A stretch of DNA of 60,362 nucleotides, the filler included, from Hausera hauseri (Eukaryota): NCBI GenBank assembly GCA_046269625.1. It is 12 parts of 12 records of this genome, joined end to end, with 100 filler letters (N's around TTAATTAATTAA, not from the genome) between each part and the next. Parts side by side here need not be neighbours in the genome. Positions count along the whole stretch, not along the records: positions 34,891 to 39,558 come from JBJURY010482465.1; 11 more parts are not named here. One strand, written 5' to 3'. Below, piece after piece: positions 34,891 to 39,558 of this stretch. Position 1 is the stretch's first letter, and the number at the start of each line of letters is the position of its first letter. A model generated the notes under the pieces. That model saw only the letters and a program-made list of their open reading frames with translations. It was not told the origin of the DNA and ran no database searches. Both the position numbers and the translations under genes were made by a program.

Positions 34891-37800
34891 TGTCGAAATA
34901 TCTGCCCAACCCATGCTCTCTGATGAAGATCTTAGTAAGATCGAAATATTAAAACGTTCGAATCCAGGAGCATTATTGTCCTCTAAAAGGCATTTATGCA
35001 TAATTCAATAACAACTTTACATGTTTTTCGTGAAGAATCCTACTGATAACTTATATTTTATACTAACAGGCTTGGACAATGCTTTAACAAATAACAGCAT
35101 CCAATATAAAGCTGATTAAATAAATGACATAGTCTAAAAAACGTCGTCATTTGTGAGATCACCCTTCTGTTGGTAGTTGCGTAATTACATGTACCTAGAG
35201 TACAACATATTTTGTGTGCGAGGTTCACAAAGATGAGTAGACTCTCGTGTCGAAATATCTGCCCAACCCATGCTCTCTGATGAAGATCTTAGTAAGATCG
35301 AAATATTAAAACTTTCGAATCCAGCAGCATTATTGTCCTCTTAACGAATTTATGGATAATTTAATAATAATTTTACATGTTGCTCCTAAAGAATCCTATT
35401 GATAACTTATAATTTATACTCTCTGGCTTCGACAAGGCTTTACCAAATAACAGCATCCAATAAAAGGGTGAGTAAATAAATGTCATAGTATAAAAAACGT
35501 CGTCAATTGTGACATCAGCATTATTTTGGTAGTTGGGTACCTACATGTACCTAGAGTACAACATATTTTGTGTGCCAGGTTCAAAAAGAAGTGTGGACAC
35601 GCGTGTCGAAATATCTGCCCAATCCATGCTCTCTGATGAAGATCTTAATAATATAGAAATATTAAAACAATCAAATCCATCAGCATTATTGATCTCTGTA
35701 AGGCATTTATGAATAATTTTATAATAACTTTACATGTTGTTCCAAAAGAATCCTACTGATAACGTATATCTTATACTAACTGGCTTGGACAAGGTTTGAC
35801 CAAATAAGAGCGTCCAATAAATGCTGATTAAATAAATGACATAGTCAAAAAAGCGTCGACAATTGTGAGATCACCTTTCACTTGGTAGTTGGTACCTACA
35901 TATACCTAGAGTACAACATATTTTGTGTGCGAGGTTCATAAAGTTGAGTAGACACTCGTCTCCAAATATCTACCCAACCCATGCTCTCTGATGAAGATCT
36001 TAGCAAAATCGAAATATTAAAACATTCGAATCCAGCAGTATTATTGTGCTCTAAAAGGTATTTATGTATAAAATAATAATAACTTTACATGTTGCTCTTA
36101 TAGAATCCTACTGATAATTTATAACTTATACGAACTGGCTTGGACAATGCTTTAAAAAATAATAGCATCCAATAAAAAGCTGATTAAATAAATGACATAG
36201 TCTAAAAAAGGTCGTCATTTGTGAGACCACCTTTGTGTTGGTAGTTGGTTAATTACATGTACATAGAGTACAACATATTTTGTGTGCGAGGTTCACAAAG
36301 ATGAGTAGACACTCGTGTCGAAATATCTGGCCAACCCATGTTCTCTGATGAAGGTCTTAGTAAAATCGAAATATTAAAACGTTCGAATCCAGCAGCATTA
36401 TTGTTCTATATAAGGCATTTATGCATAAGTTAATGATAACTTTACATGTTGCTCCTAAGGAATCCTACTAATAACTTATAACTTATACTAACTGGCTTCG
36501 ACAAGGCTTTAACAAACTACAGCATCCAATAAAAGGCTGATTAAATAAATGATGTAGTCTAACAATTGTCTTCAATTGTGACATCACTTTTCTGTTGGTA
36601 GTTGGGTACCTACATGTACCTAGAGTACAACATATTTTGTGTGCGAGGTTCACAAGGATGAGTAGACACTCGTGTCAAAATATCTTCCCAACTTATGCTT
36701 TCTGATGAAGATGTTAGTAAGATCGAAATATTAAAACGTTCGAATCCAGTTGGATTATTGTGCTGTAAAATGCATTTATGAATAATTAGTAAAATTTTTA
36801 CATGTTGCTCCTAAAGAATCCTACTGATAACTTATAACTTATACTAACTGGTTAGGACAAGGCTTTACCAAATAAGAGCGTCCAAGTAAAAGCTGGTTAA
36901 ATAAATGATATAGTCTAGAAAACGTCGCCAATTGTGATATCACCTTTTTTTTGGTAGTTGAATACCTACATATACCTAGAGTACAACATATTTTGTGTGC
37001 GAGGTTCGTAAAGTTGAGTAGACACTCGTGTCGAAATATCTACTCAACCCATGCTCTCTTATGAAGATCTTAGTTAAATCAAAATATTAAAACGTTCGAA
37101 TCCTGCACCATTATTGTCCTATAGAGGGCATTTATAAATAATTTCATAATAATTTTACATGTTGCTCCTAAAGAATCCTACTGATAACTTATAACTTATA
37201 CTAGCTGGCTTCGACAAGGCTTCATCAAATAAAAGTATCCAATATAAAGCTGATTAAATAAATTGCATAGTCTAAAACGTCGTCATTTTTGAGATCACAT
37301 TTCTATTGGTAGTTGGGTACATAAATATACCTAGAGTACAACATATTTTTTGTGCGAGGTTCAAAAAGATGAGTCGACACTCGTGTCGAAATATCTGCCC
37401 AACCCATGCTCTCTGATGAAGATCTTAGTAAGATCGAAATATTAAAACTTTCGAATCCAGCAGCATTATTGTCCTCTTAACGAATTTATGGATAATTTAA
37501 TAATAATTTTACATGTTGCTCCTAAAGAATCCTATTGATAACTTATAATTTATACTCTCTGGCTTCGACAAGGCTTTACCAAATAACAGCATCCAATAAA
37601 AGGGTGAGTAAATAAATGTCATAGTATAAAAAACGTCGTCAATTGTGACATCAGCATTATTTTGGTAGTTGGGTACCTACATGTACCTAGAGTACAACAT
37701 ATTTTGTGTGCCAGGTTCAAAAAGAAGTGTGGACACGCGTGTCGAAATATCTGCCCAATCCATGCTCTCTGATGAAGATCTTAATAATATAGAAATATTA

Positions 37801-39558
37801 AAACAATCAAATCCATCAGCATTATTGATCTCTGTAAGGCATTTATGAATAATTTTATAATAACTTTACATGTTGTTCCAAAAGAATCCTACTGATAACG
37901 TATATCTTATACTAACTGGCTTGGACAAGGTTTGACCAAATAAGAGCGTCCAATAAATGCTGATTAAATAAATGACATAGTCAAAAAAGCGTCGACAATT
38001 GTGAGATCACCTTTCACTTGGTAGTTGGTACCTACATATACCTAGAGTACAACATATTTTGTGTGCGAGGTTCATAAAGTTGAGTAGACACTCGTCTCCA
38101 AATATCTACCCAACCCATGCTCTCTGATGAAGATCTTAGCAAAATCGAAATATTAAAACATTCGAATCCAGCAGTATTATTGTGCTCTAAAAGGTATTTA
38201 TGTATAAAATAATAATAACTTTACATGTTGCTCTTATAGAATCCTACTGATAATTTATAACTTATACGAACTGGCTTGGACAATGCTTTAAAAAATAATA
38301 GCATCCAATAAAAAGCTGATTAAATAAATGACATAGTCTAAAAAAGGTCGTCATTTGTGAGACCACCTTTGTGTTGGTAGTTGGTTAATTACATGTACAT
38401 AGAGTACAACATATTTTGTGTGCGAGGTTCACAAAGATGAGTAGACACTCGTGTCGAAATATCTGGCCAACCCATGTTCTCTGATGAAGGTCTTAGTAAA
38501 ATCGAAATATTAAAACGTTCGAATCCAGCAGCATTATTGTTCTATATAAGGCATTTATGCATAAGTTAATGATAACTTTACATGTTGCTCCTAAGGAATC
38601 CTACTGATAACTTATAACTTATACTAACTGGCTTCGACAAGGCTTAATAAAACGCTGACTAAATAAATGACATAGTCTAAAAAATGTAGTCAATAGTGAG
38701 ATCACATTTCTGTTGGTAGTTGGGTACCTAAATATACCTAGAGTACGACATGTATTTTGTGCGAGGTTCAAAAAGTTGTTTGGACACGCGTGTCTAAATA
38801 CCTGCCAAACCCATGCGCTCTGATGAAGATCTTAGTAAGATAGAAATATTAAAACGTTTGAATCCAGCAACATTATTGTCCTCTATAATGCATTTATGTA
38901 CAATTAGTAAAAGTTTTACATGTTGCTCCTACAGATTCCTACTGATAATTTATAACTTATACGAACTGGTTTGGACAAGGCTTTACCAAATAACAGCATC
39001 CAATAAAATCTGATAGAATAAATGACATAGTCTAAAACGTCGCTATTTGTGAGATCACATTTCTATTCGTAGTAGGGTACCTAAATATACATAGAGTAAA
39101 ACATATTTTGTGTGCGAGGTGCAAAAAGATGTGTAGACACTCGTGTCGAAATATCTGCCCAACCCATGCTCTCTGATGAAAATCATAATATGATCGAAAT
39201 ATTGGAACGTTCCAATGCAGCAGTATTATTATCCTCTAAAATGCATTTATGAATCATTTAATAATAACTTTACATGTTGCTCCTAAAGAATCCTACTGAT
39301 AACTTATAAATTACACTAACTAGCTTGGACAAGGCTTTGCCAATTCACAGCATCCAATAAAATGCTGATTAAATTAATGACATAGTCTAAAACACCTTGT
39401 CAAATGTGAGACCACCTTTCTTTTGGTAGTTGAATACCTACATATACCTAGAGTATAACATATTCTGTGTGCGAGGTTCACAAAGATGAGTAGACACTCG
39501 TGTCGAAATATCTGCCCAACCCATGCTCTCTGATGAAGATCTTAGTAAGATCGAAATA
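34891..39558 (+). repeat. Tandem satellite, ~356-bp monomer, ~13 copies, filling the whole contig
   Basis: Monomer starts near 34891, 35248, 35604, 35959, 36316, 36673, 37029, 37384, 37740, 38095, 38452, 38791, 39144 and 39501. Confidence 0.98.
34913..34957 (+). ncRNA. Minimal type I hammerhead-ribozyme-like motif, recurring once per satellite monomer
   Basis: CTGATGA-A-[GATCTT agt AAGATC]-GAAA-TATT; imperfect stem I between ATGCTCT and AAAACGT. Confidence 0.6.

What the first reader, a model, noticed from the sequence alone, without database searches (positions are those of the whole stretch)
34891..39558. Satellite whose ~356-bp monomer carries a hammerhead ribozyme core: candidate retrozyme or Penelope-derived array
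Seen: 13 of 14 monomer starts keep CTGATGA, then an extra A, a hairpin (consensus GATCTT-agt-AAGATC) and GAAATA(TT). The monomer at 39166-39210 has a compensatory stem II change (ATCAT/ATGAT instead of ATCTT/AAGAT) and a 6/7-paired stem I (ATGCTCT with GGAACGT). Known: minimal type I hammerheads with an extra nucleotide after CUGAUGA and a palindromic stem III occur in Penelope-like element repeats and cleave as dimers, and tandem repeats of a few hundred bp with one hammerhead per unit (newt satellite 2, schistosome Sm-alpha, non-LTR retrozymes) produce monomeric or circular RNAs. Inference: this array is a retrozyme family or a satellite derived from one. Caveat: stem I has two A-C mismatches in most copies, so many may be inactive.
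Basis: partly seen in the sequence, partly recalled or inferred. Interest (0 to 1): 0.8.

Follow-up and report, generated by a model that had tools for sequence, protein, structure and literature searches.

The report
Satellite repeat carrying a minimal hammerhead motif
This is a very abundant 357-bp tandem repeat in which each unit carries the sequence signature of the small "minimal hammerhead" self-cutting RNA known from Penelope-like retroelements and animal retrozymes, so it is a new example of a known kind, and most copies here look decayed.

Summary
The piece is 13.2 head-to-tail copies of a 357-bp, 34% G+C unit. In 13 of 14 phase positions, on the + strand only, it carries CTGATGA, an extra A, a 6-bp hairpin closed by G-C, then GAAATATT. 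Chance gives about 7e-8 such motifs per monomer. The motif shows the hallmarks published for the Penelope-type minimal type I hammerhead: an unpaired base before helix II, G10.1-C11.1, a long helix II, a short weak helix I, and no helix III beyond a palindromic A-UA-U, which implies action as a dimer.

Evidence for present activity is weak:
- Rfam hammerhead models do not match.
- Only 4 of 14 copies keep both the core and a perfect helix II.
- Stem changes mostly break pairs, and covariation is not significant.
- The hammerhead fold is energetically disfavoured, as monomer and as dimer.
- No RNA run exists for the organism.

In favour, core bases vary less than the monomer average (1.7% against 9.3%, p about 0.04). 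The dominant variant in one public run repairs one helix I mismatch.

Verdict: a satellite descended from a Penelope-pLTR or retrozyme-type repeat, now amplified largely at the DNA level. It is a new member of a known kind.

The parts
34891..39558 (+). Tandem array of a 357-bp satellite, 13.2 copies, 33.6% G+C, running off both ends of the piece
   Evidence: TRF; monomer spacing 339-357 bp; base composition
34913..34957 (+). Hammerhead motif, copy 1. It reads helix I 5' strand ATGCTCT, core CTGATGA, extra A, helix II GATCTT-AGT-AAGATC, GAA, ATAT, T17, helix I 3' strand AAAACGT. The core is intact, helix II is perfect and helix I has 5 of 7 pairs.
34950..34951 (+). Predicted cleavage site in the type I register, after GAAAUAUU. 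It recurs in phase in every monomer, 30/31 bases after the C of each CTGATGA.
   Evidence: Inferred from the standard hammerhead numbering applied to the table; not tested experimentally
35270..35314 (+). Hammerhead motif, copy 2, identical to copy 8 at 37406-37450. The core is intact, helix II is perfect and helix I has 4 of 7 pairs.
37051..37095 (+). Hammerhead motif, copy 7, with a broken core (CTTATGA, and AAA for GAA)
39166..39210 (+). Hammerhead motif, copy 13. Helix II has a double compensatory change but has lost G10.1. Helix I has 6 of 7 pairs.
39523..39558 (+). Hammerhead motif, copy 14, cut by the end of the piece after GAAATA
34948..34963 (.). 16-nt near-palindrome ATTAAAACGTTCGAAT that spans the predicted cut site. 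It is present in phase in each monomer and is perfect in copy 13 (39201-39216).
34955..34965 (+). CGTTCGAATCC, a 10 of 11 match to the RNA polymerase III B-box consensus. Five copies match at one mismatch.
   Evidence: 0.15 expected by chance; no A box; no tRNA
35230..35259 (+). Second, decayed hammerhead-like half, 48 nt upstream of the main one. It reads AAGATGA-GTA, a hairpin that is GACA-CTCG-TGTC in the consensus (GACT-CTCG-TGTC in this copy, one pair broken), then GAAATATC. C3 and U4 are replaced by AA in every copy.
35244..36509 (+). Block repeated at 37380-38645, six monomers away. 1226 bp are exact, followed by one mismatch at 36470.

Best explanation
The piece is part of a very abundant 357-bp satellite. 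Its monomer descends from a repeat carrying a Penelope-type minimal type I hammerhead ribozyme, that is, a non-LTR retrozyme or a tandemised Penelope pseudo-LTR. In such elements a multimeric + strand transcript brings the hammerheads of two units together. Their palindromic A-UA-U segments pair to build the missing helix III. Each core then cuts after GAAAUAUU, releasing 357-nt monomers with 5'-OH and 2',3'-cyclic phosphate ends, which a tRNA ligase (RtcB) can close into circles. In this array that mechanism is mostly a relic. The catalytic core is kept, but helices I and II are eroding, and the array has grown by DNA-level duplication. Shown here: the motif, its non-random nature, its match to the published signature, its abundance and the decay of the stems. 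Inferred: descent from a Penelope-like element or retrozyme, the dimer mechanism, the cut site and circularisation.
For: - CTGATGA-A-hairpin-GAAATATT is present in phase in 13 of 14 units, on the + strand only.
- The chance expectation is 7e-8 per monomer for a relaxed descriptor and 7e-10 for one as good as observed.
- The motif matches the features that Cervera and de la Pena list as emergent hallmarks of Penelope minimal hammerheads: a base between positions 9 and 10.1, G10.1-C11.1, palindromic 15.2-16.2, a long helix II, a short helix I and no helix III (PMC4209133).
- Unit size, low G+C and tandem form fit animal non-LTR retrozymes of 150-450 bp (PMC7229834). A 2026 preprint derives those retrozymes from Penelope pseudo-LTRs.
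- The 12 core bases deviate from the consensus by 1.7%, against 9.3% for the monomer. A shifted-pattern control gives p about 0.036.
- In run X1 the satellite is laid by 4478 contigs at word depths of 1e4 to 1e5. The dominant variant (G at 34952, 98% of the depth there) turns a helix I A-C mismatch into G-C, and no other variant with a 10% share is listed in that hammerhead copy.
- Decay and DNA-level growth: only 4 of 14 copies keep the core plus a perfect helix II, and a 1.27-kb block is duplicated with one mismatch.
Against: - No Rfam hammerhead model matches, even at E up to 10 on a 76-nt stretch.
- Covariation in helices I and II is not above the controls (41-113 of 500 shuffles reach the observed values).
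- The 45-nt motif as a whole is no better conserved than many other parts of the monomer (rank 71 of 358 windows).
- Nearest-neighbour energies of the hammerhead fold are +10 to -2.5 kcal/mol as a monomer and +18.7 to -1.0 as a dimer. Competing folds reach -5 to -21.
- The G at 34952 also pairs in a competing palindrome, so it is not specific support for helix I.
- No RNA run, no Penelope ORF and no array ends are available.
Confidence: 0.55

Rival explanations
1. The family is a currently active non-LTR retrozyme. Arrays are transcribed, the dimeric minimal hammerhead cuts after GAAAUAUU, monomers are ligated into 357-nt circular RNAs, and new copies arise by reverse transcription with a Penelope-like enzyme. 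The decayed copies in this piece are simply an old array.
For: The core is kept in 13 of 14 copies and varies less than the monomer. The dominant genome variant has the best helix I, 6 of 7 pairs, with an intact core and helix II. The + strand monomer folds somewhat better than shuffles (z -1.78, 4 of 100 shuffles as good), whereas the - strand does not (z -0.60). Published retrozymes of this size give abundant circles.
Against: No transcript evidence could be obtained. The hammerhead fold is energetically disfavoured. RNAfold gives -5.0 kcal/mol at best for the 45-nt motif, which does not pass the 'lower than -5' rule of the 2026 preprint. Published minimal hammerheads cleave poorly even as dimers. 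Eight of nine predicted Xenopus retrozyme dimers did not cleave in vitro. The exact 1.27-kb duplication points to DNA-level amplification.
Confidence: 0.25
2. The array is an ordinary satellite and the hammerhead-like motif arose by chance. It looks conserved only because all units are recent copies of one another.
For: The 13 of 14 conservation is expected from common descent of the units. There is no significant covariation and no Rfam match. Other parts of the monomer are conserved at least as well.
Against: Chance expectation is 7e-8 to 7e-10 per monomer, or about 0.02 to 2 hits in 10 Gb. In addition, the motif shows three features that were not needed to recognise it but are typical of Penelope minimal hammerheads: the extra base, the G-C closing pair and the palindromic 15.2-16.2. 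It also sits in a repeat of typical retrozyme size.
Confidence: 0.07
3. The same core works as a type III hammerhead within one unit. Cleavage occurs after CGUGUC, 26 bases upstream of CUGAUGA (for example 35251|35252). Helix III is AUAU/GUGU and helix I is closed by an 11-nt loop.
For: It has the canonical GUC cleavage triplet, and 97% of helix III cells are paired in the alignment. It would not need a dimer.
Against: Helix I has the same two A-C mismatches plus two G-U pairs. The energy is worse than the type I register in all 12 copies evaluated (+6 to +16 kcal/mol). There is no covariation. The dominant variant at 34952 does nothing for it. Type III hammerheads are typical of plants and viroids, whereas tandem animal repeats carry type I.
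Confidence: 0.05
4. The repeat is a SINE-like element driven by RNA polymerase III, of the schistosome Sm-alpha kind. An internal B box next to the hammerhead recruits TFIIIC, and the ribozyme trims multimeric Pol III transcripts.
For: CGTTCGAATCC matches the B-box consensus at 10 of 11 positions in five copies, against 0.15 expected by chance. It lies 4 bases after the predicted cut. Sm-alpha elements combine a Pol III promoter with a hammerhead in tandem repeats.
Against: There is no A box within two mismatches in phase and no tRNA-like fold. The B-box-like string overlaps the palindrome and may exist for that reason. The hammerhead is of the Penelope minimal type, not the canonical Sm-alpha type.
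Confidence: 0.08

Closest known systems
Minimal type I hammerheads (min-HHR) of Penelope-like element pseudo-LTRs (Cervera and de la Pena 2014, PMC4209133; Lunse et al. 2017, known here only by citation in PMC6765202)
   Same: The CUGAUGA and GAAA cores, an unpaired base between A9 and G10.1, the G10.1-C11.1 closing pair, a helix II longer than the canonical 4 bp, a short weak helix I, no helix III beyond A15.1-N-N'-U16.1 with a palindromic centre, and the implied action as a dimer of neighbouring copies.
   Different: Here the motif sits in a high-copy 357-bp satellite array with no ORF. In the published cases it sits in the terminal repeat of a 3-kb element encoding RT and GIY-YIG endonuclease. 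No link to a Penelope ORF could be tested. Helix II is 6 bp, against 7-8 bp in the Schistosoma families.
Animal non-LTR retrozymes (Cervera and de la Pena 2020, PMC7229834; Li et al. 2026 preprint, 10.64898/2026.07.22.740005)
   Same: Tandem units of 150-450 bp, low G+C, one type I hammerhead per unit on one strand, and many copies. The mussel units are 350-390 bp.
   Different: The experimentally characterised retrozymes carry canonical type I hammerheads with a real (if short) helix III and, in most, loop-loop contacts. This one is the minimal form. The mussel hammerhead sequence is unrelated. Expression, circles and target-site duplications are unknown here.
Newt satellite 2 and axolotl HHR_Amex1 repeats (about 330 bp)
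   Same: An abundant satellite of similar unit length whose hammerhead has too weak a helix III to work alone and cleaves as a dimer.
   Different: The amphibian motif has a 1-bp helix III capped by a palindromic tetraloop, plus conserved loop 1-loop 2 contacts. Here there is no loop 3 at all and no recognisable loop contacts.
Schistosome Sm-alpha SINE-like repeats
   Same: Tandem repeats with a hammerhead next to Pol III promoter elements. Here a B-box-like 11-mer follows the hammerhead.
   Different: No A box and no tRNA-like part are present, and the hammerhead is minimal rather than canonical.

Membership tests
Hammerhead ribozyme, type I | Conserved core C3-U4-G5-A6-N7-G8-A9 and G12-A13-A14 | tested here: met
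   13 of 14 copies have CTGATGA, and 12 of 13 complete copies have GAA
Hammerhead ribozyme, type I | Helix II hairpin closed by G10.1-C11.1 | tested here: met
   The consensus GATCTT-AGT-AAGATC is 6 bp. The G-C closing pair is kept in 10 of 14 copies, and the helix is perfect in 4.
Hammerhead ribozyme, type I | A15.1-U16.1 pair and a non-G base at position 17 before the cut | tested here: met
   ATAT-T in all 13 complete copies
Hammerhead ribozyme, type I | Helix I formed by the flanks | tested here: inconclusive
   3 to 6 of 7 positions are paired, with two A-C mismatches in most copies. The dominant variant in run X1 has 6 of 7.
Hammerhead ribozyme, type I | Helix III hairpin within one molecule | tested here: not met
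   Only A-UA-U lies between GAA and position 17, so no hairpin is possible. A dimer is required.
Hammerhead ribozyme, type I | Match to the Rfam hammerhead covariance models | tested here: not met
   No hammerhead family matches at E up to 10, on the whole piece or on a 76-nt stretch
Hammerhead ribozyme, type I | Self-cleavage | not testable with these tools
   Needs transcription assays. The computed energies do not favour the fold.
Penelope-type minimal hammerhead (min-HHR) | Unpaired base between positions 9 and 10.1 | tested here: met
   An A is present in 14 of 14 copies. The feature is described in PMC4209133.
Penelope-type minimal hammerhead (min-HHR) | Palindromic 15.2-16.2 with no or a palindromic loop 3 | tested here: met
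   U15.2-A16.2 is invariant in 13 of 13 copies
Penelope-type minimal hammerhead (min-HHR) | Helix II longer and helix I shorter than in canonical hammerheads | tested here: met
   Helix II is 6 bp, and helix I has at most 3 contiguous pairs in most copies. Compare.
Penelope-type minimal hammerhead (min-HHR) | Families with compensatory changes in the stems | tested here: inconclusive
   There is one double change in helix II, and two pair types (C-G, U-A) at one helix I position. This is not above the shuffle controls with 9 distinct rows.
Penelope-type minimal hammerhead (min-HHR) | Location in the terminal repeat of an element encoding RT and GIY-YIG endonuclease | not testable with these tools
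   Only the array is available, and its longest ORF is 66 aa
Animal non-LTR retrozyme | Tandem units of 150-450 bp with low G+C and one type I hammerhead each | tested here: met
   357 bp, 33.6% G+C and 13.2 units. The hammerhead is of the minimal form.
Animal non-LTR retrozyme | Expressed as monomer-length linear and circular RNA | not testable with these tools
   No RNA run holds the sequence. The single holder consists of contigs of unknown kind.
Animal non-LTR retrozyme | Highly self-paired monomer RNA | tested here: inconclusive
   The + strand gives -74.9 kcal/mol with z -1.78; the - strand gives z -0.60
Animal non-LTR retrozyme | Operational rule of Li et al. [quoted passage not shown] | tested here: inconclusive
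   Copies 1 and 2 are consecutive and complete, but reach exactly -5.0. All other copies lie between 0 and -4.0.
Sm-alpha-like Pol III SINE with hammerhead | Internal A and B boxes | tested here: not met
   A B-box-like 11-mer is present, but there is no A box and no tRNA-like structure

The most novel reading that the evidence does not exclude
The dominant form of this satellite is a living retrozyme that runs on the Penelope-type minimal hammerhead rather than a canonical one. Transcription, possibly by Pol III from the B-box-like element, gives multimers. Dimeric hammerheads cut these inside the conserved 16-nt palindrome. The palindrome then holds the two ends side by side as a nicked hairpin for ligation into 357-nt circles. 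That would make a major satellite of this genome a factory of circular RNA, and would give the poorly active minimal hammerhead a clear in vivo role.
Probability: 0.12. Interest if true: 0.55.

Novelty: new member of a known kind. Interest (0 to 1): 0.3.

Why it matters
If the family is transcribed and cleaved, it would be an abundant natural source of small circular RNA. It would also be a handy test case for how minimal hammerheads, which are nearly inactive in vitro, work in cells. If it is a relic, as I think most likely for these copies, it documents how a retroelement terminal repeat can seed a major satellite. This fits the recent proposal that animal retrozymes derive from Penelope-like elements. 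Either way the kind of element is already described in many animals.

Tried and rejected
- Rfam scans with permissive thresholds, on the whole piece and on a 76-nt stretch, gave no hammerhead or other credible family.
- A type III register with GUC cleavage is possible on paper, but is worse in energy in all 12 copies evaluated and has no covariation.
- Using the downstream palindrome as helix III was rejected by inspection. It would need two extra bases between A14 and 15.1, and it leaves no helix I.
- Exact-pattern scans of metagenome contigs (two) and viral contigs (one), for the hammerhead and for a conserved 24-mer, gave no match.
- A full-text search of papers for six conserved 14-17-mers gave no match. 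The mussel and coral retrozyme sequences in the supplement of PMC7229834 are unrelated.
- There is no tRNA, no A box and no ORF above 66 aa.
- Two papers (PMC5785218, PMC108972) are not held. The supplement of PMC4209133 with the descriptor is not held either.
- The one sequencing run found consists of contigs, so it cannot show RNA ends or strand.
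Full report
**What is in the sequence**

The piece 34891-39558 is a single tandem array with period 357, 13.2 copies and 84% matches. It is A+T-rich at 33.6% G+C. It runs off both ends of the piece and has no ORF longer than 66 aa. Neighbouring monomers are 75-94% identical. The block 35244-36509 recurs six monomers further on, at 37380-38645, with 1226 bp exact and then a single mismatch. 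The array therefore holds about ten independent monomers and has recently grown, or been assembled, by a DNA-level duplication.

**The observation**

CTGATGA occurs 13 times, always in the same phase and only on the + strand. The 14th phase position reads CTTATGA. The copy-by-copy table shows the following layout:
- helix I 5' strand ATGCTCT
- core CTGATGA
- an extra A in 14 of 14 copies
- helix II GATCTT-AGT-AAGATC
- GAA
- ATAT
- T at position 17
- helix I 3' strand AAAACGT

Two points were missed. That copy has also lost G10.1. Its AA>GG change, together with a G>C nine bases downstream, turns a near-palindrome into the perfect ATTGGAACGTTCCAAT, so it is not clean evidence for helix I.

**Is it more than chance?**

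Under the base composition of the piece, a relaxed minimal-hammerhead descriptor is expected 7e-8 times per monomer on both strands. One with a helix II as good as observed is expected 7e-10 times. That corresponds to about 2 and 0.02 hits in 10 Gb. The 13 of 14 conservation adds nothing to this, because the units are copies of one another. What adds weight is that the motif shows features that are not needed to spot a hammerhead, yet are exactly those reported as emergent hallmarks of the minimal hammerheads of Penelope-like elements. These are a base between positions 9 and 10.1, the G10.1-C11.1 pair, a palindromic 15.2-16.2, a helix II longer than usual and a short helix I (PMC4209133). I take the motif as real by descent.

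**How it would work**

Only A15.1-U15.2-A16.2-U16.1 lies between GAA and position 17, so one molecule cannot form helix III. In the published model, two hammerheads of a multimeric transcript pair through this palindrome and build a shared 4-bp helix III. Each core then cuts the other unit's site. Here the cut would fall after GAAAUAUU, at 34950|34951 and in phase in every unit, releasing 357-nt RNAs. In animal retrozymes such RNAs are circularised mainly by the RtcB tRNA ligase. All of this is inferred by analogy; none of it is shown for this sequence.

**Tests of function**

Results that favour function:
- *Conservation.* The 12 core bases deviate from the consensus by 1.7%, against 9.3% for the monomer. 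The same spatial pattern shifted around the monomer does as well in 3.6% of positions.
- *Dominant variant.* See "Genome-wide view" below.

Results that do not favour function, or are neutral:
- *Conservation of the whole motif.* The 45-nt motif ranks only 71st of 358 windows, and the 3' strand of helix II varies more than average.
- *Stems.* Only copies 1, 2, 8 and 14 keep both an intact core and a perfect helix II. Most helix II changes break pairs.
- *Covariation.* On 12 aligned copies (9 distinct), no measure for helices I plus II exceeds the shuffle controls: 41 to 113 of 500 shuffles reach the observed values. The test has little power.
- *Energies.* The type I fold costs +10.2 to -2.5 kcal/mol as a monomer, while the local minimum-energy folds reach -5 to -12. 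The double-hammerhead fold costs +18.7 to -1.0, while cofolding reaches -13 to -21. The 45-nt motif alone reaches -5.0 kcal/mol at best, through a hairpin that pairs core bases with AUAUU.
- *Rfam.* No hammerhead model matches, even at E up to 10 on 76 nt. This is expected for a motif without helix III, but it is still a failed membership test.
- *Whole-monomer fold.* The + strand has z = -1.78 and the - strand z = -0.60, which is a weak hint at most.

For context, the literature reports that minimal hammerheads cleave poorly in vitro even as dimers. It also reports that eight of nine predicted Xenopus retrozyme dimers did not cleave.

**Genome-wide view**

One public run (coded X1, organism A, kept as contigs of unknown library kind) holds the satellite. 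No RNA run was found. At 80% likeness, 4478 contigs were laid on the piece, with summed word depths of 1e4 to 3.6e5, so the repeat is very abundant. At 34952, position 1.2 of helix I, 98% of the depth (89 contigs) reads G instead of A. This turns one of the two A-C mismatches into a G-C pair, giving 6 of 7 helix I pairs. No other variant with a 10% share is listed inside that hammerhead copy, and at 39181 the majority restores G10.1. The dominant form of the satellite thus carries a better hammerhead than the copies in this piece. The caveat is that the same G also pairs with C34959 in the palindrome described next.

**Other features in the unit**

- A 16-nt near-palindrome, ATTAAAACGTTCGAAT, spans the predicted cut. 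Four of its six pairs never vary, and copy 13 makes it perfect. It competes with helix I. It could equally be a DNA-level site, or a hairpin that aligns the ends for ligation.
- CGTTCGAATCC, four bases after the cut, matches the Pol III B box at 10 of 11 positions in five copies, against 0.15 expected. There is no A box and no tRNA-like fold.
- Forty-eight bases upstream lies a second TCGAAATAT, preceded by the hairpin GACA-CTCG-TGTC and by AAGATGA. It looks like a decayed second hammerhead with C3-U4 replaced in every copy. Tandem minimal hammerheads are reported in axolotl Penelope elements.
- A type III register that uses this upstream GUC is possible, but it is worse in energy in all 12 copies evaluated and has no covariation.

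**Comparison with what is known**

The unit works like, and by motif belongs with, the minimal type I hammerheads of Penelope-like elements. By organisation it belongs with animal non-LTR retrozymes: 150-450 bp, low G+C, tandem. A 2026 preprint derives those retrozymes from Penelope pseudo-LTRs. It differs from the experimentally characterised retrozymes of coral, mussel and axolotl in having the minimal rather than a canonical hammerhead, and its sequence is unrelated to theirs. Membership in the retrozyme family in the functional sense could not be tested, since that needs transcripts, circles and target-site duplications. Nor could the link to a Penelope ORF be tested.

**Verdict**

The most likely reading (0.55) is a high-copy satellite descended from a Penelope-type or retrozyme repeat, whose hammerhead is largely a relic in this array. 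A still-active retrozyme family is the main rival (0.25). Chance (0.07), a type III register (0.05) and a Pol III SINE-like element (0.08) are minor rivals. It is a new member of a known kind and of moderate to low interest.

Noticed in passing
window 35244-36509 and 37380-38645: A 1.27-kb block (about 3.5 monomers) is repeated six monomers downstream. 1226 bp are exact, followed by one mismatch at 36470. It is either a very recent segmental duplication, a higher-order repeat, or an assembly artefact.
   Followed up: partly
window 34948-34963, in phase in each monomer; perfect at 39201-39216: A 16-nt near-palindrome, ATTAAAACGTTCGAAT, spans the predicted hammerhead cut site and competes with helix I. 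Copy 13 carries a double change that makes it perfect, and the dominant genome variant (G at 34952) also improves it.
   Followed up: partly
window 34955-34965, 36380-36390, 36737-36747, 37093-37103, 38516-38526: CGTTCGAATCC matches the RNA polymerase III B-box consensus GGTTCGANNCC at 10 of 11 positions. Five matches were found against 0.15 expected. No A box or tRNA-like fold accompanies it.
   Followed up: partly
window 35230-35259, in phase in each monomer: A second hammerhead-like half lies 48 nt upstream of the main one. It reads AAGATGA, GTA, hairpin GACA-CTCG-TGTC (consensus form), then GAAATATC, with the first two core bases replaced in all copies. It is possibly a decayed tandem partner.
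   Followed up: partly
window 38631-38969: One monomer is 339 bp instead of about 357, because of an 18-bp deletion near 38634.
   Followed up: no
window 36637 and 38059 (same phase): In run X1 the dominant form of the satellite reads G where these window copies read T (CATATTTTGTG becomes CATATTGTGTG). So this array belongs to a minority subfamily at several positions.
   Followed up: no
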